The notes beneath the pieces were generated by a model, which saw only the letters and a program-made list of their open reading frames with translations, was not told where the DNA came from and ran no database searches. From assembly GCF_006345805.1 (NCBI RefSeq), contig NC_043026.1, forward strand, positions 4,774,001 to 4,838,000: a stretch of DNA of 64,000 bases, given 5' to 3'. Positions 15,101 to 63,089 of this stretch are shown here, piece after piece. Both the position numbers and the translations under genes were made by a program. This stretch comes from Octopus sinensis (taxonomy: Eukaryota). The first letter of the stretch is position 1. The number at the start of each line of letters is the position of its first letter.

Positions 15101-15453
15101 GGGCTTGGATTTTTTGTGTGTGTTAGTGGCAGCAATGTGGGGAATTGGTGCACTGGGGTAATAGCATAGGATGGTGTTGAGTGATGGCTTGAATGTTTTG
15201 TGTATCTTTTGCCATGTTCAACATGGCTAAAAAGAATTTTCCTGCTTAGGGAGCAGTTTTTGGCTGGAGGTGTGGATAGGGTTGTAGTTTCCACTTTTGT
15301 TGTTGTTGTTTTTGTGTCTTCCTGAAAAGACTGGACCAGCATTACTGCAGCATGGTGTGTTTCTATTTTTATTTTATTCAGGTTTGTGTGTTGGCTTGAG
15401 CCCCGTTTCTGTTTGTGCGTCGGGTCCCTGGAAGATGAGTGAAGGACAGTCAC
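12118..15453 (-). CDS. LINE ORF2: APE endonuclease + reverse transcriptase, uninterrupted (first ATG at 15342, 1074 aa)
   Basis: EN motifs LNAQG, TETHL, GLYRPP, MGDFNLP, LDLVFSN, SDHD. RT motifs NYRPISLTS, YLDFSKAFD, GVPQGTVLGP, IFADD. CR1-type RPHLEYCCPLWSP and LYSLQRRRER. Confidence 0.97.
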   Translation of the reverse strand: MTVLHSSSRDPTHKQKRGSSQHTNLNKIKIETHHAAVMLVQSFQEDTKTTTTKVETTTLSTPPAKNCSLSRKILFSHVEHGKRYTKHSSHHSTPSYAITPVHQFPTLLPLTHTKNPSPLQQSKPATTLTSTFLLNAQGVSPSINAQKWKVQFIEDWVGNHSHHIPFFILTETHLDNSHLEAEVRVKNFTTIRTDRIGRRKGGTAIFLHDSFTADGNSIFSNGYCESVTVHNKANDLTVIGLYRPPQTPILCFKECLNSIKCFIQQCHSSNILMMGDFNLPCVDWTTNCLKPSTPASTADKEAAESLFDFTNEFFLSQLVLAPTRHQNILDLVFSNHTNTIHNVTVEKTLLSDHDMVLCNMKFYQPKANPSDLPPAHPFDNMDLHNANWDAIRNELSHVDWSFTHTHISTNHKTSWQIFVDTVTDICAKHSPPRPVKKKCRIPQNRKTIIRKIKRTNKIINKLKYCQQQHTHSTAIALLESKKYNLQQCMKTLINNQRSAEEKWAIEKIKLNPKVFFSFARKRRVTVSTVGPLIDETGTLQDNAKSMAEILQKQYCSVFSNPDMADLGCISDVNPQHTISDITFSAPDVLAAINEIKHNSAVGPDRFPACVLKVCRHQLASPLANLWRNSLDAGYIPKNLLSQSVVPVFKKGNKSLAVNYRPISLTSHIIKVFERVVRSRITQFLESNRWLISNQHGFRNGRDCLTQLLHHFDDILRALGEGSNTDVIYLDFSKAFDRVDHKILLKKLSNIGVSEKLLKWIKCFLTDRSQHVVVEGVKSSPAKVSSGVPQGTVLGPLLFIIYINDINDIIKHSNIKIFADDSKLQKVINEASDRTCLQSDLLDVIQWAEKNNMLLNEDKFELIHFGNEDALKLPYSLPSGETLVASNNIRDLGVIVDNNISWATHINTKVDMARRMCSWILRTFQSRDIHTIILLFSTFARPHLEYCCPLWSPHTIQGIIKVEAPQRAITKKIDGMTGLDYWGRLEKLKLYSLQRRRERYIICMMWKIFHQHCPNDVGITFKVHPRLGPRAIRPKQKSHSHLITTIRHNYFTSIGPALFNITTKHIKTETDPIGFKKSLDRFLQEIPDKPPTPGYVSVNNNSLLEWAIVPKF

Positions 15454-17747: not shown

Positions 17748-18243
17748 TATATTTATATATATATCTTTTATTTATTAATTTGTTTTTGTCATTTGTCTGC
17801 TGCCATGCTGGAGCACCGCCTTTAGTAAGACTAGTGCTTATTCTATAGGTCTCTTTTGCCGAACCGCTAGGTTACGGCGACGTAAACACACCAGCTTCGG
17901 TTGTCAAACGATGTTGGTGGGGACACAGACACACAAACATACACATACATATACATGTATATATATATATATATACACACATATATATGATGGGTTTCTT
18001 TCAGTTTCCGTCTACAAAATTGACTCACAAGCCTTTTATCAGCCCGAGGCTATAGTAGAAGACACTTGCCCAAGTTGCCACGCAGGGGGACTGAACCCGG
18101 AACCATGTGGTTGGTAAGGAAGCTACTTACCACACAGCCACTCTTGTGCCTATAAAATGAAAAGACACACGAAATACCATTAAACATTTTGGCCGGCAGG
18201 CAAACGATTCTGCCAGCTCCTATATATATATACATACATATAC

Positions 18244-28560: not shown

Positions 28561-28986
28561 CTACAGCAGTAAGTTACCACAATTATGTCGACACAGTAGT
28601 AGTTATATGTAAAATAATAGCATTATATTTTCTTTCCTTTGAGAATGCATTGATGATTATATAAGTTATCATAGAATGAACTGTGACAAACACTGCATCT
28701 TGGTTTTACAGCACATGTATGGCATGCCCTGCCTATGGAATGTAAAAGGTGATTAAACAGCTGGCATCAGGAAAAGCATTTAGCTTTTAAAGATTATTTC
28801 AAAATGGGGAAACAAAATGAGATGAGTGATTAGGAAAAGTCGAGGGTAGATATTGCTTCAGCGAATAAAAAAATTGTCTTGAGAGGTTTATCATTGTGTG
28901 AGGTAACGAATTTGGACCAATAATACAGTTGTACTTCCTAAGTGAATAGCTAAATGGGGAGATAAATATCCAATACACTGATATAG

Positions 28987-29645
<659 letters not shown>

Positions 29646-34064: not shown

Positions 34065-34380
34065 TCAGAGAAGAAACTGGATTTGTAACCGACAAACAGC
34101 GAATCTCTCCCGATTAAGCTGAAACAAACCTTCAACATACAATTTATTTCTGTGACTTTCAATAAATCTCGGCCCTTTACTGTTTATACAGCTAAAGCCC
34201 ACTTTACATACACAAATTCTTTCATTTAAATATATTTTGCTGTGGTCACCAGTCTGTGTGAAACACACCATGTTGTTAAATATACCATAGAGATGATATC
34301 TTTTCTTATCAACTGTTATGTTGCTATGAATACTGATATACTTTGTATATTTTGTATATTTTGTCCCTCTGTCTTATCTC
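34065..34380 (-). pseudogene. Paralogous fragment of the multi-beta-propeller gene (end of module 4)
   Basis: MVCFTQTGDHSKIYLNERI..KGPRF..YVEGLFQLNRERFAVCRLQ aligns with ILCLTQNGEYQRIFLNERI..KGPRF..YVEVLFMVNRDSFPVARLQ of the 1800-aa ORF; about 34 of 64 residues identical by manual count. Confidence 0.85.
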
Positions 34381-35692: not shown

Positions 35693-36819
35693 CTGTGGCA
35701 TAACTACAGATGAACACCCCATCGACTTTGTTTCCTCATAACTTCCAGGAAAATGGATATTTTTAATGAAACTTCCACTATCATTTTCTAACAGAAAAGG
35801 ATGCTCTCAAAAGAAATCTTCTTTTACAAAGCTCTTATTTTAATCCCTGTGGATAAATCCCAGCAAGAATCTTCTCAGACTCTCCAATATTTTACAATTA
35901 TATAAAGAGAAAGAATCGGGGGCCAGGAAGTGGGGCTAAAAATAATCAGAGATTTTTTAAATATTCTTTTTATTTTTTTATAACATAAATGTGTTTCTGA
36001 GGGAAAAAATGAGAAAAAAAAGAAGACAAGGAGGGTGGTGTGCTAGAAACAACAGCCAAATCTCCCTTAAATCACACACTTTTTCCCTCGAACCCTTACA
36101 AAACATTTTGCCAACAAATTTCTTTGTAATCGTAATCTACATCGTTTGAAAGTTATTTCTACCAAATTTCATTCAAATGAATACCTTTATACACATGTAT
36201 ATACCTACATATACACACATGTCTTTGCTATGTTTTTTAAACACATAAAACTCATAGATGCATACTTTTATAATATTTTACACTTAAACCGCCGCAGGAC
36301 AATATTTTTAGAGTTGCTTCTTAAAGTGTCCTTCACTTTTTTTATGAAAAACGATACAAATTTCAGAGTATTTGGCTGTTATTTCTAGCATGATGTTAAG
36401 CCATCTATAGGACAATATTTGACATGGATGGTTTGTAAATTGTCCTTCGATTTTTATTTGTGATGAAGTAAAAATGTGAAGGTTTAGGTGGCTCTTTCTA
36501 GCATGAAATGAGACCATATACAGGTTAATTTTATTTATGAATGCTTCTTAAAGTGTCCTTCAAATTTTATATGAAAAATGAAGTGGTTTCTATTTCTAGC
36601 ATGAAAAATGACCAGCTATGGGAAAGCTTTTACTGAATGCTTCTTAAAGTGTCCTTCTCTTTTTTTATGAACCCTCAACAACAACAACAACAACAACCCT
36701 ACGAGGACGAAAGGCAATGTTTGTACGTGTGTGCAGTTGGAATGCCACTGCAACAACAACAACAACAACAATCTATTCTTATTAAACGTTAAAAACTGTC
36801 AGATGCAGACTGCACACAC

Positions 36820-37350
36820 ACAACGCTGATGACGACGACGATGATGATGGTGATGTTGACGGTGACGACGATGATGATGATGATGACGATGGTGATGGTG
36901 ATGAGGATGATGATGATGATGATGGTGATGATGACGACGATGATGATGATGATGACAACGATATGATGATGATGATGATGATGACGACGACGATGCTGAT
37001 GATGATGATGACGATGATGACGATGATGATGACGACGACGATGATGATGATGACGATGATGGTGATGATGATGACGACGACGACGATGATGACGATGATG
37101 ATGATGATGACGACGATGATGATGATGATGACGATGATGGTGATGATGATGATGATGACGACGATGATGATGATGATGGTGATGATGATGATGATGATAA
37201 TGATGACGACGACGACCACGACGACCACGACCACGACGGCGGAGACGACGACGACGGCCACGACGACGACGGCGGAGACGGCCACGACGACGACGGCGGA
37301 GACGGCCACGACGACGACGGCGGAGACGACCACGACCACGACGACGGCGG
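36820..37350. repeat. (GAT/GAC)n trinucleotide tract grading into a GC-richer GAC/GGC unit
   Basis: Direct inspection; it generates the poly-S, poly-M and poly-I ORFs in the track. Confidence 0.95.
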
Positions 37351-37728
37351 TAGTCGTCTGCCTTTTAATGGAGAATCAATGATTATGAAAGTCTCTGCTT
37401 TCGGACCAGACATTCCTATACATACATGCATGCGTATATATATATACATATATATACATGCGTATATACACACACACAAACATACATATTTATAGCCTTA
37501 TTTCTATACATACATGCCTAAATATGTGTGTATATATATATAAACACATGTACATATACTGTATATAAATATACACACACACACAAAGAGAGAATGTTGA
37601 GGAATGTTACAACAATAAGTGTGTAGAATGCGATGTATGCGAAGCAGGTTCGATTCCCGGGTGGAGCCATTTACAACAACAACAACAATAAGAAGAAGAA
37701 GATTGAAGTTTAATATTTCTGGAAATAT

Positions 37729-40700
37729 TTATTTGTCAAAATAAAAGAAAGCAAAAGATTGACGTCCAGGAATAATTCCAAAAACCATCAAAGAATTGTC
37801 TGAAACATCCAAACCAAGAACTTCAGATACTTCATTATCATACCCTCTGAGGAGTAAATATTTTGGATTATCTTCTAATTCCAGGATTTCATCATCTTCA
37901 GATGTTTCCTCTTCAATATGTCCAGGTATTTCGTAAATATTGTTTCTTAAATCTGTTATATAAACACATTCACCAATTATGGTCAGACGAAGTCTTGGAA
38001 TATAATATCTCAGATCAAAAACTATTCTTTCTCTTATTCTTATCCTCCTCACCAAAGACTTTTCCCTGAACCATTCCACAAAACAAAAAACATCCCCCTG
38101 TCCAAACTCCTTCTTCTCCTTCACCTCCCACCTCACAACAACAACATCACCAAAAGATGTGACTCCCATACCATCCAACACCCCTCCATCTCCCTCCAAC
38201 CTTTCCCATCTCCCCGTCTTCCCACGACACACTTCATCTTTACATTTCCCATCTTTGATATCAACCACATCCACATAATAAGGGTCAAAGATGTCGGGGT
38301 CTTCGCAAATATAGTAATCCTTGTTGTTCTTCCATATTCTTTGGTATTTCTTGTGTCTCTCTTCTTGAGTTATGTCTCTAATATCGTGACCACCACACAC
38401 GAGTTGATTGTCGTTGTATTTATAAATCCTGTTGTAATATTTCTCAGTTCTGATGGTTTTTAAACGACAGAGATCCCTGTTGAAGACCCTCATTTCTCTC
38501 CCAAAGGCGACAATGAAACATTCCTCTGTCCACCGACATATGTCCAGTGCTGGTTGTTGTTGTTGTTCATGTTGAAGTATGTCCACTGTTGTTGTTGTTG
38601 TTCTGATTATTGTGACACTTTCTCGAAACATCAACACACTCACATTCTCATCTAACTTTATTAGTTTACTGTTCAGGTCCCTAATGTCCCAACAATCATA
38701 ATCAACAGGTTCCTCGAATGCAGGAATGGAAAAAGGGACCATTGCTGTCCTATATGGAAGTCTCCTCACTGATATTTCATCAATTCCTGAATTATTAATC
38801 TCCGCTATGTAATTACCACATCTCACCTTTAATCTATCTTTACCAATTATTTCACCTGATTTACCTCTTCTTCTTACTCCTCCATCTCCATCTCCTCCTC
38901 TGTATTCCAATTTATTAATTAATTCATTACTGAATATTTCCTTGTTCGTTTCAGATGTAATGGAAGGGAAACGAAGACCAGAATCAAGATTTAATGACGA
39001 CACAGATTCCAGAATGTTCACTTGGTCCCCATCAATCTTTATGCAATGATATTCAATCAATTCATTATGTACACACCAGTAAATACCCGCCACTTTTCTC
39101 CATATTACACCATAAGGGATGAGACTCGACCAAACTTGAGATGTCTGCAAATCTTCTCCATTCAGTTGAAATATTTCTTTCCTTTTAGGAACCGTGGCCA
39201 TTATGTGTGATTCTTGTGTAAAACACACACCACCAACTAAACTTGCAACATTTCTGTGACATAGCAACTGGCCGTCTTCATCAAATATTTTAACATTTCC
39301 ATTATTGGCTTTTTCACACACAACTGTCTTTCCTTCCTCAGAGACATCAAAATCTTTTACTTGAACAGGACATTCATCTGTTTGTAAACGAGCAACCGGG
39401 AAGCTGTCTCGATTCACCATAAACAACACTTCAACATAAAATTCCTTCCTCCTGGGGCTTCCAACAAACCTTGGTCCTTTACAGTCTATACTGGAGAAAT
39501 ATACTCTATGTTTATAAATTCTTTCATTTAAAAATATTCTCTGGTATTCCCCATTCTGGGTCAAACACAAAATGTTTTCATATCTAGATGAACCTGAACA
39601 TTTCTCCCACTCACCATAAATGTACAAAAAACTGTCATCAATTGTCATCCTGTCATCACCAGAATAGTACCCCATGTAGTGTCTGACAGAATGTAAATAT
39701 TGACCACCACTGTTGAAGAAAATGATGAATCTTTCGTTGTAGACAATGATGACATCTTCATCAGTAACTTTAATATCCCGGATTTTATCAGAACACTTTC
39801 CATATCTGACTCTACTTAATAATGGTTCAGGTATGTCTATTTTTGTTATTTCGTTCACACTCGAATGTATTTCATCAATATCAACAAAATGCAAATATCT
39901 TCTATCTCTCCATTCACTAAAAACCAGTTGATTGTTTGATAAAGAAGCCACACAATTATAATATTTATTTCTCGTTTTGTAAATTACCAACGACAATGGA
40001 AATTCCACTTTTAATGTCAACAGTTGGTGTTTATCATCATGAAATTCATCATCCCAATTCATAATGACCAGTGTGTTTGACTGCCATCGACACATTTTAA
40101 CAAAATTATAAACATTCACTTTGATTGAATCCATAAGGTGACCATCCAATGTGAATATCTTAATGTTTCTATTCTCCTCGTCCCATCCTGCAATCAGATT
40201 ATTTTCAGTAAGAACCAAACAATAAATATTCACTGGTCTTTTGTCTCCCAAATGTTTAGGGAGAGGAATATGTCTGGCTTTATCAGAAACTGTCAGGTCC
40301 TGTAGATATAAAGTGGAAGACAACATTTCACTGAGAGAAATGTGTCTGGAAAATACATCCACCAGGTCGATATAATAATTAAGTTGATTATTAGTAACGA
40401 GATCATTAACCAACAGATTCTGATCGTTTATGGCAAACATACGGCTTCTGTCTATCAGATAAACAGACGTTTGGTCAATAGATCCACCTTGGAGACTGAG
40501 GGGACGTTTCGCTTGGGACATTAAAACACTGGGGAGCATCTGACGACTGCCATGACCACCACCACCTATTCTAGTGTTGTACTGAAAAGCTTTTCCCCTA
40601 GTAACAATTAATAGCTTTTCTGTTTTCTTGTCTATTGATAATGATTTCACAAACACAGGGATATTAATTGTCTTAATTACTTCAACTTGATTATAATAAT

Positions 40701-43131
40701 TGATGGCTAAAATGTCTAAATGTGATGGTTTATCACAATAACAAACAATTTCCCCTTCACCCATCTTACACATCCGTACATAAGGCTGCCTTAATGATAC
40801 ACTTCTCACTGTCTTTGATAGGTTTCCGATGACCCTTAATTGTTTCTGTAGGGGTAATGTGACCCCTATATGATTAGAATCCCATCGACATATATCCGTG
40901 GCTGTAGACGGCAGAGATAATCTGGACACAATGTCTCCTTCCTCAGAAATGTACAACAAGCAATCATGGTTGATGTCAGACACCACCAACTGTCCATTGG
41001 ACAGATTACATATTTCGCCAATGACAAGTTTTTGGTCATTCTCCTTTTCTCTGAGTCGTAGATTTAGATTTCTGATGTAAGGATTTTTAATGGGTAAAAG
41101 ACAGCCAGACGACCGGTCTTGATACTTGTAAAGAAAAACCCTGTTGAGTTGAGTGTCCGGGACATAAAGAGTTCCTTGGAAAACAGCAATGTGAGGGTGA
41201 ACAGGGAAAGGCAGTTCCCACTGCCATTTCATTTGTCCATATAGATCGTAACATCTGAGAATAGAGTGTCTCCTGAAGAGGACATAGAAATAAACATTAT
41301 CAGAGTAGATGTGATGAGGGTGGCCATAGAATGGAAGGTATTTTTGAAAAAGTTCTTCACCACATGTGGAATAAAATACCATTTTATTTTCGTTTCCATC
41401 TACGACTACAAAATTAATTGGAGTTGCAGCAATGCTGACATTATGATGTCCCAGAGAAATTCTTTCTGCAATGTCAACTTTATTTTCGTTGATCAAGAGG
41501 ATATGGACCTCGCTTTTGTTTTCAGTGGTGGTCACAGCTAGACACTTATTTGATACAACATGACATAGTTCAATGTAATCAGTATGGACTTTCATTAAAG
41601 GGCCTTTCATTAGCCCAGGGCATGTGATACACTGAAATTCTTTGTTTTCATGGTAAAACACCAGAAATCCTTTAGAATTTATTCTACAAAAGCAAGAAGG
41701 AATCTCAGGGAAAGTTGAATTATTTTGGTTAATTATTTCTCCAGTCTCAGTGAATAATATAGCTTTATTATTCCTGTAGAATATTAATATAGAAGATGTA
41801 GACATAGGTAGAATATTTGTAATGTTGTAGCAATCCTCAATATAAATATAGCTGTTCAATGTTGGGGTCCATAGCTGGGTGTTATGTGACTGCCTGGGCC
41901 AAAAGTCTTCATTTGTTCCAATGATATGAAGGACATCAAAATAATCGGTTACAAAAATGTTTTCTCTGCCAACAGAAATATGGCGGCATTTCATGCCAAT
42001 TTCTCTTGTTGTCACAGCACCTGTACCTGAAATCCGATAAATGATACGTCCCTGGAGGACATAAAAATGGTTTTGGTAGACAGAAATGTGGCTTGGAGTG
42101 TCCAGGGAGTTGGTATCCACCTCAAATAACTGCTGGCCATCCACATTGTAACAGGTAACCCTGTTAATATTGGAAAAGGATACTAAGAGTTTGTTTTGTG
42201 CTCCTACAGCAATATCTGAAGGGGTTTCTTTCGTTATGAATTTGTATTTTATTCTATTCTCTTCCCAGTCAATGACGTATATGGTCTGACCAAACATTTC
42301 TACACCTATAAGCGCAGAATGTTCCAAATAAGAAACCAAGATTAATCCTAGCTGAATTCTTTTGATTCTCAAACTTAAAGGGTTGATAATAAGAAACATT
42401 TTTCGGAAGGGCAGGGTGGCGAGGACTGTGTCTTCACTGATTCTGGTAAAATCAGTGACAGAAGATGAGCAACGAACATCGTTTCTGTTGCCGTCTCTTG
42501 TTATACAACATATTGTCATAAAGTGGCGGGAATATGTTACAATACCCCCTTGTATGACAACAATATTGGATATTGGGTTGCTTAAGTCTTCACCAGATTC
42601 CTCAATCTCTACTTCTCTGGTCACAACTGGCTGAAGAGGCCGAAATTTTGTGGTTACTTTTGGTGGTTCAATGGTCTTGTGGTTGTATGGGTTACAGGTG
42701 ACATAAATGTCAAAGAGTCTTTGTTGAAACCAATCAAGATTTTGGTGAACAAAATCATTATTTTGTTTTGCAAATTCCAGAAATCTTGGCATTTTACGTT
42801 TGATATTATGTAAAATTCGAGATCCATTTAAACCCAGAGAGTCCATGTGATTACATTTATCCTTTACATAATCTATAAACATATTGATGTGGTCTGTTTT
42901 GATTAGTGTTCGGTAACATGTAACAATATGAAGAAAACTTGGTAACATGGACTTTTCCTGTTCTTTAGATTTCTTTGTGTCTTTTCTTTCCTGATCTTCT
43001 GTTTTCTTTGTGTTTTGTGTGTGTAATATTTGGGTAAGAATTGGTGCAGTTTCCTTATAAATTGCTGTTGTATCACAGACTGTGGCAGGAATGAGAGCCA
43101 ACATTTTGTTTTCTTCATTAATCTTCTCCAT
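37729..43131 (-). CDS. Large about 1800-aa protein: helical N-terminal region + about six tandem NHL-like/6-bladed beta-propeller modules, in one giant exon
   Basis: 5.4 kb without a stop in AT-rich DNA. A recurring (D/C)xCR(W/I)..(V/A)TxP blade motif lies at about aa 228, 481, 748, 1014, 1303 and 1531. NHL-like blades such as LSNGQLVVSDINHD, GNVKIFDEDGQ and RVTCYNVDGQQLF. The true exon may start at the acceptor CTCTCATTCCTGCCACAG|43079 (phase 1). Confidence 0.9.
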   Translation of the reverse strand: MEKINEENKMLALIPATVCDTTAIYKETAPILTQILHTQNTKKTEDQERKDTKKSKEQEKSMLPSFLHIVTCYRTLIKTDHINMFIDYVKDKCNHMDSLGLNGSRILHNIKRKMPRFLEFAKQNNDFVHQNLDWFQQRLFDIYVTCNPYNHKTIEPPKVTTKFRPLQPVVTREVEIEESGEDLSNPISNIVVIQGGIVTYSRHFMTICCITRDGNRNDVRCSSSVTDFTRISEDTVLATLPFRKMFLIINPLSLRIKRIQLGLILVSYLEHSALIGVEMFGQTIYVIDWEENRIKYKFITKETPSDIAVGAQNKLLVSFSNINRVTCYNVDGQQLFEVDTNSLDTPSHISVYQNHFYVLQGRIIYRISGTGAVTTREIGMKCRHISVGRENIFVTDYFDVLHIIGTNEDFWPRQSHNTQLWTPTLNSYIYIEDCYNITNILPMSTSSILIFYRNNKAILFTETGEIINQNNSTFPEIPSCFCRINSKGFLVFYHENKEFQCITCPGLMKGPLMKVHTDYIELCHVVSNKCLAVTTTENKSEVHILLINENKVDIAERISLGHHNVSIAATPINFVVVDGNENKMVFYSTCGEELFQKYLPFYGHPHHIYSDNVYFYVLFRRHSILRCYDLYGQMKWQWELPFPVHPHIAVFQGTLYVPDTQLNRVFLYKYQDRSSGCLLPIKNPYIRNLNLRLREKENDQKLVIGEICNLSNGQLVVSDINHDCLLYISEEGDIVSRLSLPSTATDICRWDSNHIGVTLPLQKQLRVIGNLSKTVRSVSLRQPYVRMCKMGEGEIVCYCDKPSHLDILAINYYNQVEVIKTINIPVFVKSLSIDKKTEKLLIVTRGKAFQYNTRIGGGGHGSRQMLPSVLMSQAKRPLSLQGGSIDQTSVYLIDRSRMFAINDQNLLVNDLVTNNQLNYYIDLVDVFSRHISLSEMLSSTLYLQDLTVSDKARHIPLPKHLGDKRPVNIYCLVLTENNLIAGWDEENRNIKIFTLDGHLMDSIKVNVYNFVKMCRWQSNTLVIMNWDDEFHDDKHQLLTLKVEFPLSLVIYKTRNKYYNCVASLSNNQLVFSEWRDRRYLHFVDIDEIHSSVNEITKIDIPEPLLSRVRYGKCSDKIRDIKVTDEDVIIVYNERFIIFFNSGGQYLHSVRHYMGYYSGDDRMTIDDSFLYIYGEWEKCSGSSRYENILCLTQNGEYQRIFLNERIYKHRVYFSSIDCKGPRFVGSPRRKEFYVEVLFMVNRDSFPVARLQTDECPVQVKDFDVSEEGKTVVCEKANNGNVKIFDEDGQLLCHRNVASLVGGVCFTQESHIMATVPKRKEIFQLNGEDLQTSQVWSSLIPYGVIWRKVAGIYWCVHNELIEYHCIKIDGDQVNILESVSSLNLDSGLRFPSITSETNKEIFSNELINKLEYRGGDGDGGVRRRGKSGEIIGKDRLKVRCGNYIAEINNSGIDEISVRRLPYRTAMVPFSIPAFEEPVDYDCWDIRDLNSKLIKLDENVSVLMFRESVTIIRTTTTTVDILQHEQQQQPALDICRWTEECFIVAFGREMRVFNRDLCRLKTIRTEKYYNRIYKYNDNQLVCGGHDIRDITQEERHKKYQRIWKNNKDYYICEDPDIFDPYYVDVVDIKDGKCKDEVCRGKTGRWERLEGDGGVLDGMGVTSFGDVVVVRWEVKEKKEFGQGDVFCFVEWFREKSLVRRIRIRERIVFDLRYYIPRLRLTIIGECVYITDLRNNIYEIPGHIEEETSEDDEILELEDNPKYLLLRGYDNEVSEVLGLDVSDNSLMVFGIIPGRQSFAFFYFDK

Positions 43132-44894
43132 TTATGAATATAGAATTATTATCTTTTTCTGTTAAATATATTCTTTTTTGTGGATTTTGTTTTCTTCCTT
43201 TGGAATACAATTTATCTCTTCAAAATTCACTAATTTTTACATGAAAGCTGAAATAAAATGAAAACTCTATTAGTTTTGTGAAAAGCTTTTGATAAAATAA
43301 TATTTACTTGATTCATTCAAAGAATTTCAAGGAAAACACACATTTCATAAAATATATTAAACAAATTGTTTATTTGACAGTGAAGTTAAACATTTAAACT
43401 GTTTTCAATGGAACAATCATTAGAAATAAAACTTGAAGATATAAATACACCATTATCTTTATTGACTGAATATAAGTGATGGTGAAAAGTTTTGTAGTAA
43501 GAAGGAATATAAATATTTTGTTGAGGTTATTTCTACAGATATTATCGGTAGAAATTATAGCCAGGACTGATTTCCTGCTACAACATTTCATATCGAAATG
43601 TCAGACGGAAACAAACAATGAGATCAAAGAGAAAAACATCTGTTGTTTGTTCTCATTGTTTATTTCATTGTTTGTTTACATCTGACATCTCGATAGGAAA
43701 GGTTTTAGCAAAAAATCAGAGCCAACCATAATTTCTATGGAATATCAATAGAATAATGTGAAAAACACTGCTAACAAAGTAGAATGTGGTGTTGACTTCT
43801 AAAACGATTTAATATATTTTACAGGAATTTATGGTTGCATAATGAAATACCACGTCCCTACAAATCAGGAATATAAGTATTATTAATAATTATATGCACT
43901 GGAAATGATGTGACAGTCATGGTTGGCTTGGTTTCCATCATATTTACCTGAATTCACAGATACCAATAAAGCCGGAGATGAAACTGTTCTTAACCTGACA
44001 AATGCTGTAAATCTCTTGACATTTCAATATAATCCACACAATTATCATACACAACATTGATTAACTCAGAAAGCTTATCCAAAGATGGGCTTTCATATAA
44101 TCACACTGATAGACAGCATGTTGAGAGGATCGTTATTATTTGTTGCTGATTGAGATCATAAAGATTGGTTAATGAATAAGCCCAATTAATGAAAGGTAGG
44201 TTCATCTTAATTATCTTTAATATAAGGGACAATGTTTGGGTAGCAATGAGAAAGATGTGTCTGTATGAAAAAGGGGTTTGGCAGGTGAAGTGTGTTTTGT
44301 TTTGTGTCAGGTGAGGAGTTATAACTTGGTGTAGTTTATTATGAAGTATTGGGGGTTTAATGAGGTGGATTAGGAAATATTGGTGGGGTGTTTAATGACA
44401 TTCTGGTGACCCATCATTATCAGAATGATCCTCCACCGCCTCCTTTGTCTATGAAATAATGACTGTTACTCTATTGACCCCAGGAGGAATGAAAAATAAA
44501 AGAGACCTTGTTCAGGATGTCAGCTCTTTGAATATACATGGACTAAACAACAACATATTTTTGGGGAAAAGCTGGATAAGGCTATGTTGTTGTTATTGCT
44601 GTTGTTGTTGGCAGCAAAGTTTATAAAGAGAAAAGCAGATAATTGCAAATATTTCTATTGTAAAATTAAATTGGAATGAATGTTTATGTTTCATTTGTGC
44701 CATTCTACTTGGTTTATTTTGGGGAAGAAAAACCTACAAAACCCCTCATAATAATTAGACTTTAATCTAATTGTAGATGTATTTATATACACATGCATAC
44801 ATATATATGAATGAATGTGTATTATATATACACAAGGATGCACATATGTATATTTATACATCCATATGTCTGTATGTATGTATGATGATCATCA

Positions 44895-47606: not shown

Positions 47607-50256
47607 ATTCCCTCTCTTCTTTTCAATATCAACTTCAACATTTTATTTCCCTTTTACATAAACATGTATATATTATGTGTGTGTGTGTTTATATAGTGTA
47701 CATGTATATACTCTCTCTTTTACACTTTTACCTGTTTCAGTCATTTGACTGCGGCCATGCTGGAGCACCGCCTTTAGTCAAGCAAATCGACCCTGCGACT
47801 TATTCTTTGTTAGCCTAGTACTTATTCTATCGATCTCTTTTGCTGAACCGCTAAGTGATGGGGACGTAAACACACCAGCATCGGTTGTCAAGCAATGCTA
47901 GGAGGACAAACACAGACACACAAACATACACATACACACATACATATATATACATATATACGACAGGCTTCTTTGAGTTTCCTTCTACCAAATCCACACA
48001 TAAGGCTTTGGTCGGCCCGAGGCTATAGTAGAAGACACTTGCCCAAGATGCCACGCAGTGGAACTGAACCCGGAACCATGTGGGTGGTAAGCAAGCTACT
48101 TACCACACAGCCACTCTAGCGCCTGTATGTATATATATATATATTCTTTTATTCTTGTACTTGTTTCAATCATTTCACTGTGGCCATACTGGAGCACCAC
48201 CTTTAGTCGAGCAAATCGACCCCAGGACTTATTCTTTGTAAGCCTAGTATTTATTCTATTGGTGTCTTTTGCTGAACTTTTAAGTTACAGGGATGTAAAC
48301 ACACCAACATCGGTTGTCAAGCAATGTTAGTGGGACAAAAATAAAGACACAATTACGTACCTATTTGATTTCTTAGCTTATATTTCTGTAAAATTGATTT
48401 AGAAATTTTGAATTTTCCATGAAACATTAAATCTAAACCCTTTTGTCATTAAATATAATTTATATTTTCTTTCTTTAGAATTCATCAAATATTTTTGAAA
48501 TTGTTTCAAAAAAATATAAACTTTCTCTTCTTGTAAAAGAATTTGAAATCCTGGACACATTTTTTATAGTTTATAAAATGGTTGGAGGAAATTAGCACAA
48601 ACGTGAAGAGTGTGCGTATATATGTATGTATACAAGTGTGTATCTCTCTCTCTCTCTCTCACTTTATATATATATATATATATATTCTTTCCATCATTTA
48701 ATCATTAGTACTTACTGTTTAATTAAAATATCAACTCCATTTCCTAATTTAGCTGATCCACAAATAGATTCAGTTAAAATATTTACCGGACTTAAAAAGA
48801 AATGCTGGTGCTAATACAATCAGTTAAATATATAAAAGCAATGCTCCATCATGGCCATGGTTCAATAACTAAAGGAGTAAAACACATCAGCCACACATTA
48901 CATACATAACTTGAAATCTTTCTACTTCACCACGACCACCACCATTTAGTCTGTTAACCTATCTCTATAAATGACACAGCCTCTCTTCAATTATTATTCA
49001 TGTCTTTCTCATCCACAAATCTACACTTAAAAAAAACACCCATCACTATTCTATTTCTCAACCAAGCTGATAATTCCACAGAAATCTCCAAGAATATTTC
49101 TAAATTTACCAAATTATAACATAGATTATTCCTTCAAATACAATATTTAAATGTAATTTATAAAAATATATCAAAACTATAATCTTTTTAAATTTAATAG
49201 GATGTTAACTTTTATAATGTCAGAATACAATTTATAAAGTTGAAATATTAGAATTATTTTTATAAAAATTATATTTGAAATGTAACAAATATATTTGTTT
49301 AAAATAAATTAAAATTATGGCTTCTGTTGATGAAAGTTAATTCTTATCTAGTCACCCTATAGTCAGACATTCTAGCCATGACCTCACCAATGTGTTATTA
49401 TCTAATATGTTTTTAAGGGCATTTTTGGGGGACTTTGTTGTTAGTTTGTAATAGAGTTTATATTAAATGCAGACAGTGTGAAATATTTCCCAGAAGCCAT
49501 CCATCTGATAAATAATATTGAAGATGGTGAGAAAACATATTTAATGCATTGCACATTAAAATGTTGATGTAGGATAAAGATGTGCTGAGAGAGAAAATAT
49601 ATGTTGTCACCAAATTGTTTAATATTTAAACAATTCTTCTTGTTTGCTTCAAGATATAAAAATAGAAATGAAATCACCAGAACAATTCCATTTATATACA
49701 AAGTTTAATATTGAAATAAAAAATCAGTTTTAAAAAATTTCATTGATTGAAAAAAGAAAAAGATCAATTAGTAGAGTCGTTAGAACATATGGACTTAATA
49801 CCTTGTGGTATTTATTCTCTTTGTCTGCTGAATTCAAATCCTGCCGAGATTAATTTTAATTTTTATTATGCTAGTGTCAATAATTAAAATGTCAATCTGA
49901 GGTGGTGGTCTGATGGAATTATATATTTGACAATATTCCTTGTAGTATTTAACCCTTTCGCTACTTTATTTATTTTGAGATGATCTGTGTTTCTTTTAAT
50001 TACTTTTGATATAACAAAGAAGTTAGTAAAATAAATTCGTTATTATGAAGTTAGAGTTAGGAACATAAATTGTGACTAAGTTTTGGTGGAAGATTTTAAT
50101 TTAAAACTTATGAAAATAAGACATTTGTACTCAGAGCCAGTTTCAGCTGGGTTTCTATTGAAAGGGTTTATGTAGTTCTTTGTGATCTGAGTTCAAATCC
50201 TTTTGTTGCTGCCCTGGGTTTCAGACTTAATCTATAACCTTTTTCAACACCATCAC

Positions 50257-52286: not shown

Positions 52287-52515
52287 GCGGTGAGCTGGCA
52301 GAAACGTTAGCGTGCCGGGCGACCTGCGTAGCCGTATTTCGTCTGTCGTTACGTTCCGAGTTCAAATTCCGCCGAGGTTGACTTTGCCTTTCATCCTTTC
52401 GGGGTCGATAAATTAAGTACCAGTTACGCACTGGGGTCGATGTAATCGACTTAATCCCTTTGTCTGTCCTTGTTTGTCCCCTCTGTGTTTAGCCCCTTGT
52501 GGGTAGTAAAGAAAT
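52287..52515 (+). mobile_element. Near-intact tRNA-derived SINE, family A
   Basis: A-box-like GGCGGTGAGCTGGCAGAA, B-box GAGTTCAAATTCC, core GACTTTGCCTTTCATCCTTTCGGGGTCGATAAATTAAGTACC, and a 3-prime tail. Confidence 0.85.
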
Positions 52516-52931
52516 ATATATATGTGTATAAATTACATATACATGCATACATTGTTCAATTTATTGTTTTGTTTTTTCATTTCAGATTTATATTTATATG
52601 TATGTATCTATATATATAAATATATATATTGTGCCCTTGCTGGGGCACTGCCCTGAAACGTTTTAAACACATGAATTGACCTCATTTAAAAAAAAATATT
52701 GATATTTATTTTATTGATTTTTTTTTGATGAACCACTGGGTTACAGGAATGTAAACACACACCAGTTGTCAAGCGATTGTGGGGAAGAAATACTCACAAA
52801 GATCTATGCATTTAGATGTATGTATACATATGATGGGCTTCTTTCAGTTTCCATCTACAAAATCCTCTCACAAAATTTTGGTGGGCGTGAGACTGTAGTA
52901 GAAGACACTTGCCCATGGTGGCACACTGTGG

Positions 52932-58100: not shown

Positions 58101-61100
58101 TTTCGATCCTCCATATCAAAGGTTCTGACTAGACTCTGCAGAAAAGAATTCTGTTTCCATCATCAGTTTGATTGGTCACCTTCCTTTGTCGGTTGAGTAA
58201 AGTGTCATCCAAGCTGATGTTTATTGCTAATTAAACTTAATTTGCAACACTTTATCCGCTTTGTTTTTGTTGATAATTCTTATCAAAAACTTTTCCTGTG
58301 ATCCTGATTTGAGAAGACATACAAAAGTATGCTAAAGATCGGACATAATCTCTCGTGGCCAAGAAATGTAAAATAAAGTTTATTATAAACAACACAAATA
58401 CTTTGTAATTTAACAGATTTCAATGTGATACCTGTTAATTAGAAATTATTTTTATTTAAAGAAAATTTAATAAAATCTAATCATGAGTGAAATTATGCTA
58501 AATACAACTAAATTGAAAACCTTTTACCCCTGGCCATATTGGTAATTCTGAAAACTTTTGGGTGCTTTTTTTAACAATTTTTATCCTGGAAATCACCTGC
58601 ATAAATTACACAGGTGCACAAATTACATGGGTTTTTACGGTAATAATTTTACCTTGTCCTTACCCTTAGTGCTGAAGAGTGCAGTTCATTTTTAACAGCT
58701 ATTTTTTCAAAGTTATAATGGAAGTGACAAAGGAGCATATTCGGCATATTTTGTTTTATGAGTTCAATCAAGGCAACAACACAACGGAAAATGCGAGGGA
58801 TATTAATGCAGTGTATGGGGATTGGACAATAAGTGTAAGCCAGTGTCAACGGTGGTTCCAGAAATTCCGAGTCAGAAACTATAGCCTAGAAGACGAGTTT
58901 TGTCCTGGAAGATCTGTAGAGCTTGATGAGGACATCCTGCAAACCCTAGTGGAACAAAATCCCATTGTAACTGTTGAGGAGCTAGCAGAAACTTGGATTT
59001 GGTTACTCAACCATTCATCAACACCTGCGTGCCATTGAAAAAGTCAACAAATAGAGTCAATGGGTTCCTCACAAATTTTCCAAGTCTAATTGCACGCAGT
59101 GAGTGAATGTGTGCTCTTCTTTGCTGTCACATCTCACGAATAAACCATTTTTGGACTGAATAGTGACTGGAGATGAGAAATGGGTTCTCTATAAAAATGT
59201 CTATAAAATAATGCCAAATCTGCGAAATCCATAGTTTACTGATTGGATCAACATATGATTTGATTCGATGTTCTACATGTAAAAATGACACAAAAATAAT
59301 TTAAGAATAAACCAGCTTTATTTAGATTTCATAACGTCTTCAGAGAGAAATGATGTAAAAAGTAAAGATTATAGGCCACACAGTGAAGAAGATAAGTGAT
59401 TGAGAAGACAGAGGGACAGATTCGGAGATAGAAAGACAGACAGGCTCTGACATACAGACAGATGGCTACAGTAGACAGGAGAGGGACAACACAAGCGACA
59501 TGATGTTGGAAAATTTGCAGGAACAGGTGGGGAAGAGTGGGGCAGGCATGATGGAATACATACAAGCGTAGTGAATAAAGGATTTTTATTAGAAACTAGA
59601 ATGACCTGACATTTATTGATGTAAATTATAGGCCACGCAGTCAAGACGATATATAATTGAGAAGGCAGAAAGACAGACAGACAGACACTGACAAATAGAT
59701 TCTCAGATCGGACTGAGACAAACAGACTGAGGGAGAGATAGAGAAACTGAGAGGAGAGTAGTAAAGCTGTGACAGCTGAATTGAGAAGAGGAGGGAAGGA
59801 TCATGAGGAATCTCATGGAAAGAGATAAACATAGGGGTGATGAGGTGTTAGAGTTTGACCTTCAAAGTACAAGAATGAGTGGGGCAGAGGGAAGAAAAGT
59901 GTGGGACAGTTGGTGGAGGGGTGGGCGATTGTGGAAGGGTGAAGAGATGGCAAGTAGGCAACCTGCAATGATGCAAGACACATAGGGGAGTAGGAAGTGA
60001 CTGAGAATTCAAAGCAGCAGAGAAGAGTAATGATGACACAGTAGACAGGAGAGGGACAACAGAAGCGACATGATGTTGGATAATTTACAGGAACAGGTGG
60101 GGAAGAAGAGGGGGAGGCATGATGGAATACATACAAGCGTAGTGAATAAAGGATTTTTATTAGAAATACTACAGCAGTAAGTTACCACAATTATGTCGAC
60201 ACAGTAGTAGTTATATGTAAAATAATAGCATTATATTTTCTTTCCTTTGAGAATGCATTGATGATTATATAAGTTATCATAGAATGAACTGTGACAAACA
60301 CTGCATCTTGGTTTTACAGCACATGTATGGCATGCCCTGCCTATGGAATGTAAAAGGTGATTAAACAGCTGGCATCAGGAAAAGCATTTAGCTTTTAAAG
60401 ATTATTTCAAAATGGGGAAACAAAATGAGATGAGTGATTAGGAAAGGTCGAGGGTAGATATTGCTTCAGCGAATAAAAAAATTGTCTTGAGAGGTTTATC
60501 ATTGTGTGAGTTAACGAATTTGGACCAATAATACAGTTGTACTTCCTAAGTGAATAGCTAAATGGGGAGATACATATCCAACACACTGATATAGTTAATC
60601 CCCTGTATGGGTCCGTTTGTGTTTAGTTAAGTTACCAGCCTGTGAGAATGATTTACCACAGACATCACAGTGATATGGCTTCAGACCCATATGAATACGT
60701 TTATGATTAGTGAGACCATCATTCCTAGAGAATGATTTACTGCAGATGTCACAGTGATATGGTTTCTCTCCTGTATGAGTACGTTTATGTTTAGTCAATT
60801 GACCAGATTCAGAAAAATATTTACCACAGATATCACAGTGATATGGTCTTTCTCCTGTATGAGTACGTTTGTGGTAAGTCAAGTGAACAGATTCAGAGAA
60901 TGATTTACCACAGATATCACAATGATGTGGTTTCTCTCCTGTGTGAACACGTTTATGACTAGTGACACCATCATTCCTAGAGAATGATTCACCACAGATG
61001 TCACACTGATTTGGTTTCTCACCTGTATGAATACGGATGTGCCTTGTTAAGTTGTGAGAGTCAGTGAATGATTTACCACAGATATCACAGTGATAAGGAT

Positions 61101-63089
61101 TCTCACGTGCATGAATACATTTATGCATAGTCAAGAGACTACTTCTAGAGAATGATTTACCACAAATATCACAGTGATATGGTTTCTCTCCTGTATGAGT
61201 ACGTTTATGGTTACTTAAGTGACCAAATTCTGAGAATGCTTTACAGATGTCTGATGTCAGGTATCTACCATATCCTGAACGTCTTGCTTCCCTGAGCATG
61301 GACATATTAAAGTTTAGACGTCTGGCAACTGGGTTGGCAGATATCCACAAGATTATCCACCATCTCTCCAACAACCTTGGGCACTTTTTTGAAATTCAAG
61401 TCTAGCTCTCATGAGTAAGCTTACAAAATCACTCAGCAACACAATACCCATGACTTTTGGAAACGTATTTTCACACTCAGAATTGCTGAAGCATGGAATA
61501 AACTATCCAAATCAGTTGTCAGCTGTCGACACACTACAATCCTTCCAAATGTCCATGCTTCCTAAAATTCACCAACTGCAGACCTAATGCCACCTATTTT
61601 TTTTTTTGTAGTGCACACGAGCACTGTATATAACAATTTCATTATTATTATTATTTTTTAAATTCTGGCTGTCAAACTTGTCAGACTGAAACCCAATGGA
61701 CAACTATATTTGGAGCATTGAAAGCAAAACTAATAAGTAACCTCACAATACTATAGTTTCACTGAAGGTTGCGCTACTACTAGCGAACAGTGGTCCCGGT
61801 GCACACCAGTTAGTCATGACTAGTCGATCCTTACTTTGTGTAAAAAAATTATTTATTTTGTGTTTTATTTACTTTGCTAGGTAGTCGTTGTAGGATCAAC
61901 TACTCACGACTAGCTGGCACGGATGCGCAACTGCGCGCACCGGGACCACTATTCGCTAGTAGTACCCAGAACAACATATACAATAAAGCTTTCCAATGAA
62001 AAATTTAAAACTGTAATTTGAGAGAAAATTGCCTACTACCTCTAGCAGGTTGAGAAACCAGGTAAAGGCTACGGCTATATCTCTTTGTTGTTCTTTAAAG
62101 CCCAGAGCAGACCTATGATAAAAGTTGTTTGCAAGAATATTAGGAATCCTATGACCGGTTAATGGAAAAGAAATACTATATATTATATGTTGATAAACGA
62201 AGGAAAGATTTTGTGTTTCGCGTGTGATGTTTTAGTTTATCAAATTTTAGTATCAATTTGTTTGGTGGTTGTGCAAGCTTTCTTTATTTGATGTTGTGCT
62301 ACTGTCGTCTTCTTTGTCATACGAGTTATTTTCGGTGTGGTTATGAATTGCTCCTAGTTTTGTTTGTTTTAATTATTCTCGTATTTGAAGTCATGAAATG
62401 TAATTTCTTTTATTTTACCAACAAATGAAATACCTTCATGGAATCGTTTGACCTGTTTGAAATAACATTCTCTGCTCCTGCAGAACAACAACAACAATAC
62501 AAAAACGATAAACAACAACAATTACGACATTTAAAATAAAACAACTTTTGAAAATATATGATGAATATAGTGGGATACCTATTTCTTCACTACCCACAAG
62601 GGGCTAAACACAGAGGGGCAAACAAGGACACCTTGAAAAGGTAAAATAAAGGGAAGAGAAAATCGGCGGGAGAAAGCGACACGTCCGATTGTCACACACA
62701 CACACACACTCTCTCTCTCTCTCTCTTTCTTTCTCTTTTCTCTCTCTCTCTCTCTTTCTTTCTTTCTCTCTCTCTCTCTCTCTTATACTCTTTCTGTCTC
62801 GAAAACCCATTTCATTAAGAAGTAATAATGCAAAAGAAAAAAAATAACTTAAAATTATATAAATATATATATGTTCATATATGTGAATGTAGGAGTATTT
62901 CTTTTACGAATTTATGTCTAAAGATAAGAATCGAGTCAAACGTTGGCATCAAAAGCTCCAATTTAAGAACCGATTATTTCTGAAAACACACTGATTCATT
63001 TTTTTGTATGGGAATACGGTGAGGAAACAAAGATTTGCTTTAAGGCGGTAATAATATGTTTAAATAAGTGAAATATTTCAAGGTTACCC

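What the first reader, a model, noticed from the sequence alone, without database searches (positions are those of the whole stretch)
37729..43131. Giant single-exon protein built from about six tandem NHL-like beta-propellers: candidate lineage-specific recognition or immune scaffold
Seen: an 1800-codon open frame whose equivalent blade motif (TDFTRI..ATLP, SCFCRI, TDICRW..VTLP, KMCRW, GVCFT..ATVP, LDICRW) recurs every about 230-290 aa. I see no signal peptide, TM segment, RING or B-box. Known: molluscs have expanded TRIM-like proteins ending in one such NHL propeller, and NHL domains bind RNA or protein. Inference: serial multiplication of that domain to six copies in one exon, without the TRIM part, is an architecture I cannot assign to a named gene. 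With the paralog fragment and the possible tandem duplication, it looks like an undescribed fast-evolving cephalopod family.
Basis: partly seen in the sequence, partly recalled or inferred. Interest (0 to 1): 0.78.

Follow-up and report, generated by a model that had tools for sequence, protein, structure and literature searches.

The report
Octopus protein of six NHL propellers
This is an intact, intron-free octopus gene for a 1800-residue protein made of six NHL-type beta-propellers in a row, from an uncharacterised, fast-evolving gene family found only in octopods, apparently built by repeated copying of the propeller of a mollusc TRIM-like protein.

Summary
Window 37729-43131 (-) is one uninterrupted 1800-codon ORF. 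Each of six ~230-300-aa modules matches, in register, the C-terminal propeller of molluscan RING-B-box-NHL proteins (HHalign 94-99%; reversed control <1%). That propeller matches canonical NHL at 97.7%. AlphaFold2 gives six four-stranded blades for modules 1 and 2 and all-beta folds for 4 and 6; modules 3 and 5 are poorly modelled. Foldseek returns only multi-propeller proteins. There is no RING, B-box, signal peptide or TM segment.

A profile search of 1.84 billion representative proteins found full-length relatives only in Octopus (three species) and Argonauta. All are unnamed, all eight CDSs examined are single-exon, and many cluster on one O. vulgaris chromosome.

Long-term dN/dS is 0.4-0.6, so the genes are constrained but evolve fast. 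Against the nearest counterpart, module 4 has dN/dS 2.9, and its changes sit on one propeller face (26/66 residues vs 0/43 on the other).

Best reading: an intracellular multivalent binding scaffold with a diversifying recognition face. An immune role is untested. This is a new variant of a known kind, not a TRIM, and octopod-specific rather than cephalopod-wide.

The parts
37729..43131 (-). Complete single-exon CDS, 1800 codons plus stop
   Evidence: the ORF listing. Collinear at about 94.5% nucleotide identity with O. vulgaris OX597841.1 around 9.57 Mb, which encodes P0001 (90% aa identity). The seven paralog CDSs looked up are also single-exon.
42577..43131 (-). N-terminal region, aa 1-185: disordered start, then predicted helices (aa 64-146) and a conserved linker 'NPYxHKTIxxPKxxxKFRPL'
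   Evidence: AF2 model A is helical here but at low pLDDT. No Pfam hit. No detectable similarity to the TRIM coiled-coil/linker (HHalign 0.4%). Some paralogs carry a different, basic N-terminus.
41854..42576 (-). Propeller module 1 (aa 186-426), the most conserved module
   Evidence: 23 predicted strands, i.e. six blades, at pLDDT 70-85. HHalign 96.4% to the TRIM-like propeller and 69% directly to canonical NHL. dN/dS 0.2-0.3. Contains the textbook NHL-like blade 'PSDIAVGAQNKLLVSFSNINRVTCYNVDGQQLFEV'.
41032..41853 (-). Propeller module 2 (aa 427-700)
   Evidence: 23-24 strands at pLDDT 70-86. HHalign 95.2%.
40276..41031 (-). Propeller module 3 (aa 701-952), with a G-rich insert and a helical tail
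   Evidence: The first three blades are modelled (pLDDT 55-80); the rest is poor. HHalign 98.2% over 116 columns. Carries the clearest 'TDICRW..IGVTLP' signature.
39382..40275 (-). Propeller module 4 (aa 953-1250), the hypervariable module
   Evidence: pLDDT 62-89. HHalign 99.1%, E 1e-18. This is the region that pulled TRIM-NHL proteins out of 1.84e9 representatives (E 8e-8). dN/dS 2.9 against the nearest counterpart (p = 0.012).
39580..40119 (-). Span within module 4 (aa 1005-1184) holding the variable B-C and D-A loops (one propeller face)
   Evidence: 26 of 66 loop residues differ from the O. vulgaris counterpart, against 0 of 43 in the A-B/C-D loops (Fisher p = 3e-7). Family entropy is 1.83 vs 0.69 bits (p = 1e-12). 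omega is about 1.0-1.8 on this face in the closest comparisons (0.35-0.68 in more distant pairs with saturated dS), against 0.3-0.5 elsewhere in all but the closest pair.
38677..39381 (-). Propeller module 5 (aa 1251-1485)
   Evidence: The AF2 model is poor (pLDDT <50), but HHalign gives 94.1% over 147 columns to the TRIM-like propeller. This module was not part of the search query, so the match is independent.
37732..38676 (-). Propeller module 6 (aa 1486-1800), with inserts
   Evidence: pLDDT 50-93. HHalign 97.1% over 211 columns, independent of the search query. dN/dS 2.1 against the nearest counterpart.
34083..34349 (-). Relic fragment of another family member (end of module 4), about 3.4 kb downstream of the gene
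   Evidence: tblastn: 42% identity to the gene's own aa 1152-1250 and up to 63% to paralog P0026. No ORF continues on either side.
43248..43262 (-). Possible 3' splice site (pyrimidine tract plus CAG) about 115 nt upstream of the ATG, suggesting a 5'-UTR intron; unverified
   Evidence: Read directly from the sequence. No transcript data available.

Best explanation
The gene encodes a roughly 205-kDa protein with no signal peptide or TM segment, so it is probably cytosolic. It consists of a short helical N-terminal region followed by six tandem six-bladed NHL-type beta-propellers. It belongs to an octopod-restricted, intron-less, tandemly expanded family. The family arose when the C-terminal propeller of a molluscan RING-B-box-NHL (TRIM-like) protein was duplicated serially and the ubiquitin-ligase part was lost. 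Those points are shown. The following is inferred. The protein acts as a multivalent binding scaffold. Propellers 1, 3 and 5 are conserved and probably hold common partners or the overall architecture. The face of propeller 4 formed by the B-C and D-A loops (and to a lesser degree those of propellers 2 and 6) is a recognition surface that diversifies between copies, so the family as a whole offers many specificities. This is the face conventionally called the 'top', which NHL proteins such as Brat and LIN-41 use to bind RNA (my own knowledge). The ligand may be RNA or protein. The biological setting, intracellular immunity or conflict with viruses or transposons, is a hypothesis only.
For: Intact 1800-codon ORF. 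All six modules match the TRIM-like propeller profile in register at 94-99%, against <1% for the reversed control. That profile matches canonical NHL at 97.7%, E 2e-12, and its members pass or approach the Pfam NHL cut-off and carry RING and B-box domains. AF2 gives 23-24 strands for M1 and M2 in an NHL-like A-D register, with all-beta M4 and M6. Foldseek hits are exclusively multi-propeller chains, E 1e-20 to 1e-12. Weak PDB sequence hits are all NHL proteins: Brat, Thin, TRIM71, TRIM3. Full-length relatives occur only in Octopus vulgaris, O. sinensis, O. bimaculoides and Argonauta hians among 1.84e9 representatives. The eight CDSs stay open at dS up to about 1 with omega 0.37-0.59, significantly below 1, so they are functional. 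Module 4 has omega 2.9 (p = 0.012), and modules 4+6 have p = 0.0017, against the closest counterpart. Substitutions and family-wide entropy concentrate on one face of propeller 4 (26/66 vs 0/43, p = 3e-7). That face is rich in basic and aromatic residues, while the opposite face is acidic.
Against: There is no expression, localisation or ligand data. Pfam NHL does not hit the protein itself, and five of six modules do not reach canonical NHL directly. The AF2 models have moderate confidence only (mean pLDDT 56-61), and M3's second half and M5 are unresolved. Face assignment rests on predicted strands, not on coordinates. omega on the variable face is about 1 and not significantly above 1, so relaxed constraint on long loops explains it as well as positive selection does. 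The module-4 p-value does not survive strict correction for seven segments. Gene conversion among paralogs was not excluded. The window/L001 pair may be orthologs or recent paralogs.
Confidence: 0.6

Rival explanations
1. The architecture is the same, but the role is post-transcriptional regulation rather than immune-type recognition. On this reading it is a multivalent RNA-binding protein, descended from TRIM-NHL translational repressors, that clusters mRNAs in development, germline or neurons. Paralog diversity would then reflect different RNA targets.
For: It descends from NHL propellers. The B-C/D-A faces are relatively basic and aromatic while the opposite faces are acidic. No secretion signal. 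NHL domains of Brat and LIN-41 bind RNA through the top face (my own knowledge).
Against: There are dozens of clustered, rapidly turning-over copies and many fragments. omega is >= 1 in the most recent divergence. Restriction to octopods is unusual for core developmental regulators. No RNA-binding evidence exists.
Confidence: 0.22
2. The family is evolutionary debris: retro-copied or segmentally duplicated ORFs under relaxed constraint, with no current function. The apparent hypervariable face would simply be unconstrained loops.
For: Overall dN/dS against the closest counterpart is 1.07. There are many truncated or fragmentary copies, plus a relic fragment in the window. The gene is intron-less and sits in repeat-rich surroundings with a LINE nearby.
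Against: Eight independent 5.0-5.6-kb ORFs remain open at dS 0.4-1.1. omega is 0.3-0.5 outside the variable face, with Fisher p down to 1e-22. All A-B and C-D turns of module 4 are identical between copies while the other face changes. The Argonauta homolog keeps the full layout.
Confidence: 0.08
3. The ORF is cargo of, or derived from, a mobile element and multiplies by transposition rather than as a host gene family.
For: It is multi-copy and intron-less. Some gene models fuse it to a transposase-like domain (P0014, DUF4371) or to zinc-finger arrays (P0008).
Against: Similarity between distant paralog loci ends at the CDS (window 37589-42935), with no shared termini, TIRs or LTRs. The closest locus is collinear over more than 16 kb of flank, as in orthology or segmental duplication. 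Copies cluster on one chromosome. There are no transposase, RT or integrase domains in the protein. The fused models look like annotation run-ons into neighbouring zinc-finger or transposon ORFs.
Confidence: 0.04
4. It is a divergent member of a conserved housekeeping multi-propeller scaffold (DDB1/CPSF160, IFT-A, EML or UTP type).
For: Foldseek's best hits are these proteins.
Against: TM-scores are 0.1-0.25 with rmsd 17-38 A, so they reflect only 'several propellers in a chain'. Those are 7-bladed WD40-type propellers. There is no sequence similarity by Pfam, PDB or the exhaustive HMM search. Sequence homology points to NHL instead.
Confidence: 0.02

Closest known systems
Molluscan RING-B-box-NHL-like proteins with one C-terminal propeller (e.g. 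Acanthosepion/Sepia pharaonis CAE1315789.1; Potamilus streckersoni KAK3588083.1; Gigantopelta aegis LOC121392701), themselves uncharacterised
   Same: The propeller is homologous to each of the six modules (HHalign 94-99%). They share the blade-2 signature 'GIC.W....VT.P..k.i' and NHL-like 'dG' turns. They also lack a signal peptide.
   Different: [quoted passage not shown] They are 280-860 aa rather than 1800 aa.
Canonical TRIM-NHL proteins (Brat, LIN-41/TRIM71, TRIM2/3, Thin/TRIM32; TRIM class with NHL C-terminus)
   Same: Six-bladed NHL propeller fold. These are the only (weak) PDB sequence hits. The TRIM-like intermediate matches canonical NHL at 97.7%.
   Different: No E3-ligase module and no filamin domain. 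Pfam NHL does not reach threshold. Canonical TRIM-NHLs are conserved and low-copy across animals, whereas this family is octopod-only, multi-copy and fast-evolving.
LDL-receptor family YWTD propeller arrays (LRP4, LRP2/megalin)
   Same: Several six-bladed propellers strung along one chain. Among the top Foldseek hits.
   Different: They are extracellular, separated by EGF modules, carry signal peptides and TM segments, and have the YWTD sequence signature. None of this applies here.
Intracellular multi-propeller scaffolds (DDB1, CPSF160, EML, IFT-A subunits, Utp21, Trm734)
   Same: Cytosolic or nuclear chains of two to several propellers used as multivalent platforms. Top Foldseek hits.
   Different: WD40-type seven-bladed propellers, ancient and conserved, single-copy, with no sequence relationship.
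Rapidly evolving TRIM recognition families (e.g. TRIM5 and fish finTRIM with variable B30.2/SPRY loops); analogy from my own knowledge
   Same: Lineage-specific clustered expansion of a TRIM-derived recognition domain, with variability concentrated in surface loops.
   Different: The recognition domain is SPRY, not NHL. Those proteins keep the RING/B-box effector part and have a single recognition domain. Their antiviral function is demonstrated, whereas nothing is demonstrated here.

Membership tests
NHL repeat / six-bladed NHL beta-propeller (Pfam PF01436, clan of 6-bladed propellers) | Match to the Pfam NHL repeat model above its gathering score | tested here: not met
   No NHL hit for the window protein or for any of 27 family members. 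Only sub-threshold hits to DUF5711, DUF4934 and WDR90 propeller models.
NHL repeat / six-bladed NHL beta-propeller (Pfam PF01436, clan of 6-bladed propellers) | Significant profile-level homology to bona fide NHL propellers | tested here: met
   The link is transitive. Modules match the TRIM-like propeller at 94-99%, with a reversed control <1%. The TRIM-like propeller matches canonical NHL at 97.7%, E 2e-12. Its members pass or approach the Pfam NHL cut-off (P0064 29.1 bits, P0073 45.7 bits, cut-off 20). The direct module-to-canonical-NHL match reaches only 69% (M1) and <=10% for the others. The library-wide HMM E-value to P0064 is 8e-8.
NHL repeat / six-bladed NHL beta-propeller (Pfam PF01436, clan of 6-bladed propellers) | Six blades of four antiparallel strands, about 40 aa each | tested here: inconclusive
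   Met for M1 and M2 (23-24 strands, clean A-D register) and five blades are clear in M4. M3 is half modelled, M5 unresolved and M6 irregular with inserts.
TRIM / RBCC family (including the TRIM-NHL class) | N-terminal RING finger | tested here: not met
   No RING model hit at E <= 10. The N-terminus is Cys-poor and predicted helical or disordered.
TRIM / RBCC family (including the TRIM-NHL class) | One or two B-box zinc fingers | tested here: not met
   No B-box hit in the window protein or in family members.
TRIM / RBCC family (including the TRIM-NHL class) | Coiled-coil following the B-box | tested here: inconclusive
   Helices are predicted at aa 64-146 but at pLDDT <50. HHalign against the coiled-coil/linker of the TRIM-like relatives gives 0.4%.
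WD40 repeat propellers | Match to WD40 repeat models; seven- or eight-bladed propeller | tested here: not met
   No WD40 hit. Two members give sub-threshold WDR90 or ANAPC4 hits only. Strand counts fit six blades.
LDLR class B (YWTD) propellers | YWTD repeat signature, flanking EGF modules, secretory signal | tested here: not met
   No Ldl_recept_b or EGF hits. No signal peptide or TM segment. Resemblance is at fold level only.

The most novel reading that the evidence does not exclude
Octopods evolved a new kind of intracellular recognition protein: a RING-less chain of six NHL propellers, encoded by a clustered birth-and-death gene family. One propeller face is diversified by positive selection to recognise varied non-self or selfish nucleic acids or proteins (viruses, transposons). 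This would be a functional analogue of TRIM5/finTRIM or NLR repertoires, built from a domain never before seen in tandem arrays.
Probability: 0.2. Interest if true: 0.8.

Novelty: new variant of a known kind. Interest (0 to 1): 0.55.

Why it matters
Invertebrate immune systems, including those of cephalopods, rely on large, lineage-specific receptor repertoires, and few of those in cephalopods have been identified. This family is a concrete, testable candidate. It has dozens of clustered copies, a domain known to bind RNA or protein, and a single hypervariable face set in an otherwise constrained protein. Independently of function, it is a clear example of how a new giant architecture arises: loss of the E3-ligase half of a TRIM-like gene and six-fold serial duplication of its propeller. 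It also shows that a family with no Pfam domain and only 'hypothetical protein' labels can be placed by transitive profile searches. It adds an unreported expansion to the known octopus ones (protocadherins, C2H2 zinc fingers, GPCRs), and in this window it lies next to zinc-finger arrays.

Tried and rejected
- BLASTP self-comparison found no repeats. The modules are too diverged, so profile methods were needed.
- Blade-level self-HHalign within modules gave only faint offsets of about 41, 80 and 127 aa, not significant.
- Pfam on the whole protein and on 27 members gave no usable domain.
- phmmer and hmmsearch against PDB sequences gave only non-significant hits, though all were NHL proteins.
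- Foldseek on the multi-domain models returned generic multi-propeller chains with low TM-scores, so it cannot separate NHL from WD40 or YWTD. I had no way to cut the models into single modules.
- N-terminal domain against the TRIM coiled-coil showed no similarity, so the idea that the N-domain is a TRIM coiled-coil relic is unsupported.
- The transposon-cargo idea was rejected for lack of shared termini.
- An exact look-up of the window protein found nothing on record, so the source assembly or species could not be pinned down beyond 'Octopus close to O. vulgaris'.
- The two later word-index searches (P0064, and the propeller profile A5) returned very few hits. They did not show whether octopods keep a single-propeller TRIM-like ancestor.
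- Six literature searches found no description of this family or its LOC identifiers.
Full report
**Observation.** The window contains an uninterrupted ORF of 1800 codons at 37729-43131 on the minus strand. It is the only long ORF in its neighbourhood. The other large ORF in the window (12118-15453, minus strand) is a LINE-type endonuclease/reverse-transcriptase gene. The protein has no hydrophobic stretch of TM strength (maximum 19-residue Kyte-Doolittle mean 1.52) and no signal-peptide-like N-terminus. Pfam finds no RING, B-box, NHL or WD40. It returns only sub-threshold hits to two propeller-like DUFs.

**Is the repeat real?** BLASTP of the protein against itself shows nothing. I cut a 12-member family alignment into the proposed modules and compared them as profiles. 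This gave in-register matches for M3-M6 (92.7%), M4-M6 (87.5%) and M3-M4 (67%), with weaker signals for the rest.

The decisive evidence came from outside the family. An exhaustive HMM search with aa 75-1250 (eight paralogs) against 1.84 billion representative proteins returned only 39 hits. Below the family itself, the tail consisted of proteins of 280-860 aa whose C-terminal ~230-270 residues aligned with module 4. The best was P0064 at E = 8e-8, from the cuttlefish Acanthosepion pharaonis. Pfam shows these proteins carry RING, B-box and NHL repeats. They come from a cuttlefish, a freshwater mussel and unnamed assemblies, plus a gastropod.

A profile of seven such propellers matches every one of the six octopus modules in register:

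| Module | HHalign probability |
|---|---|
| M1 | 96.4% |
| M2 | 95.2% |
| M3 | 98.2% |
| M4 | 99.1% |
| M5 | 94.1% |
| M6 | 97.1% |

E-values run from 1e-7 to 1e-18. M5 and M6 were not in the search query, so those two matches are independent. The N-terminal domain scores 0.1%, and the reversed profile scores 0.1-0.8%. The same TRIM-like propeller profile matches canonical NHL domains (three RING-B-box-filamin-NHL proteins and two bacterial NHL propellers) at 97.7%, E 2e-12. The octopus modules reach canonical NHL directly only for M1, at 69%. So 'NHL-like' is correct, but it is established through an intermediate.

**Structure.** AlphaFold2 was run on two overlapping halves with a 27-sequence alignment. 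Confidence was moderate (mean pLDDT 56 and 61).
- M1 (aa ~186-410) and M2 (~427-670) are all-beta with 23-24 strands each, at pLDDT 70-85.
- M4 (~953-1230) reaches pLDDT 62-89 and M6 (~1460-1800) 50-93.
- The first half of M3 is modelled; M5 is not resolved.
- The N-terminal 185 residues are helical or disordered at low confidence.

Grouping the strands in fours gives a clean NHL-like register in every resolved blade: A 'xxIAV', B 'LLVSD', C 'RVxxY', D 'xLFEV'. Foldseek against the PDB returns only multi-propeller chains, such as IFT-A subunits, LRP4/LRP2, Utp21, EML, DDB1, Trm734 and CPSF160, at E 1e-20 to 1e-12. TM-scores are low, as expected for flexible multi-domain models. This confirms 'a chain of propellers' but cannot discriminate the propeller type. 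Weak PDB sequence hits are all NHL proteins: Brat, Thin, TRIM71 and TRIM3.

**Family and distribution.** The first homology search found 41 clusters, all from Octopus vulgaris, O. sinensis or O. bimaculoides, and all labelled 'hypothetical' or 'uncharacterized'. More than twenty lie on one 29.2-Mb O. vulgaris chromosome. The exhaustive search added Argonauta hians (1913 aa, same layout) and a divergent paralog shared by the three Octopus species. All shorter hits are Octopus fragments. No squid, cuttlefish, Nautilus or other mollusc has a multi-propeller member in these libraries.

All eight CDSs examined are single-exon. Similarity between distant paralog loci stops at the CDS, so there are no shared transposon termini. 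The closest locus (O. vulgaris OX597841.1, around 9.57 Mb) is collinear with the window over more than 16 kb at about 94.5% nucleotide identity. The window's exact protein is not on record. A ~90-100-aa relic of another copy lies at 34083-34349.

**Evolutionary rate.** Across the eight CDSs, dN/dS is 0.37-0.59. It is lowest in M1 (0.15-0.40) and highest in M4 and M6. Outside the variable face, omega is 0.3-0.5 with Fisher p down to 1e-22. The genes are therefore under purifying selection, though weaker than is typical.

Against the nearest counterpart, overall omega is 1.07, made up of 0.5-0.8 in N, M1, M2, M3 and M5, but 2.9 in M4 (66 nonsynonymous vs 6 synonymous changes, p = 0.012) and 2.1 in M6. 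For M4 and M6 combined, p = 0.0017.

I mapped changes onto the predicted strands. By the topology of a four-stranded meander, the B-C and D-A loops lie on one face of a propeller and the A-B and C-D loops on the other. In M4, 26 of 66 residues on the B-C/D-A face differ, against 0 of 43 on the other face (p = 3e-7). Family-wide entropy is 1.83 vs 0.69 bits (p = 1e-12). M2 and M6 show the same trend weakly, M3 shows none, and M1 trends the opposite way. Every A-B and C-D turn of M4 is identical between the two copies. On the variable face omega is about 1.0-1.8 in the closest comparisons, not significantly above 1, and 0.35-0.68 in more distant pairs where dS is saturated. That face is rich in basic and aromatic residues, while the opposite face is acidic.

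**Interpretation.**
- *Shown:* an intact gene for six tandem NHL-type propellers without the TRIM effector part. It belongs to an octopod-restricted, clustered, intron-less, fast-evolving family whose nearest relatives are molluscan single-propeller TRIM-like proteins.
- *Inferred:* origin by serial duplication of that propeller with loss of RING and B-box. Function as an intracellular multivalent scaffold, in which conserved propellers (1, 3, 5) provide architecture or common partners and the variable face of propeller 4 (less so 2 and 6) provides copy-specific recognition. The conventional 'top' face is the one NHL proteins use for RNA binding (my own knowledge).
- *Not settled here:* whether the ligand is RNA or protein, and whether the setting is immunity, genome defence or gene regulation. 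No expression data could be consulted.

**Rivals.** These are an RNA-regulatory role, non-functional debris, transposon cargo, and a divergent housekeeping WD40 scaffold. They are weighed in the rival section; the last two are poorly supported.

**Comparison and novelty.** The protein is not a TRIM, since RING and B-box were tested and are absent. It does not meet the Pfam NHL threshold, but it is a remote NHL homolog. Tandem six-bladed propellers are known in LDL-receptor relatives, which are extracellular and of YWTD type. Multi-propeller scaffolds are known among WD40 proteins. I found no description of a chain of NHL propellers or of this family in six literature searches. The sequences themselves are already in public databases as hypothetical proteins. 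I therefore rate it a new variant of a known kind, of moderate-to-good interest. The structural and evolutionary case is solid. The functional case is an attractive but untested hypothesis.

Noticed in passing
window 12118-15453 (-): A 1111-aa ORF with apurinic-type endonuclease and reverse-transcriptase motifs: an apparently intact LINE-type retrotransposon copy.
   Followed up: partly
window ~28969-29640 (-) and ~60577-61251 (-): Two C2H2 zinc-finger arrays, 55-60% identical to the zinc-finger part of P0008. P0008 is an O. vulgaris gene model that fuses a zinc-finger gene to a family member. So the propeller gene sits among the expanded octopus C2H2 genes, and some database models are run-on fusions.
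   Followed up: partly
window 36782-37479: Microsatellite-like low-complexity DNA just downstream of the gene. It produces spurious ORFs made of V/I/S/P/H runs on the minus strand.
   Followed up: no
window ~11486-11890, ~17960-18150, ~47940-48144, ~52334-52516: Dispersed repeats of about 180-190 bp. They also occur as tandem arrays in the flanks of paralog loci (80-94% identity) and are probably SINE or satellite families.
   Followed up: no
P0060 / P0121 (O. vulgaris, 12.0-Mb contig): Gene models named 'E3 ubiquitin-protein ligase MIB2(-like)' contain a stretch matching the end of the N-domain and first blades of this family (profile positions 76-202, E 4e-30). This is either an annotation chimera or a real fusion of a family fragment with a RING-type ligase gene.
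   Followed up: no
P0033, P0034, P0044; window aa ~1516-1527: The junction before propeller 6 and the C-terminal part of propeller 6 tolerate lineage-specific low-complexity inserts. Examples are acidic 'SEDQISEE' repeats in P0033 and P0034, a Q/P/Y-rich 'YTPPLQQ' run and N-terminal 'ADNTRMV' repeats in Argonauta, and a short TTTTT...QQQQ stretch in the window protein.
   Followed up: no
P0023, P0031, P0035, P0038, P0039, P0041: Several paralogs carry a different, basic, Ser/Lys-rich N-terminus (possibly NLS-like) in place of the 'MEKINEENK...' start. This suggests two N-terminal exon or variant types within the family.
   Followed up: no
L006 1-18460 (-) (O. sinensis CM016888.1): A gene model of 1956 aa is annotated on the opposite strand, overlapping the paralog P0026. 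It is possibly a mis-annotation or an antisense transcript.
   Followed up: no
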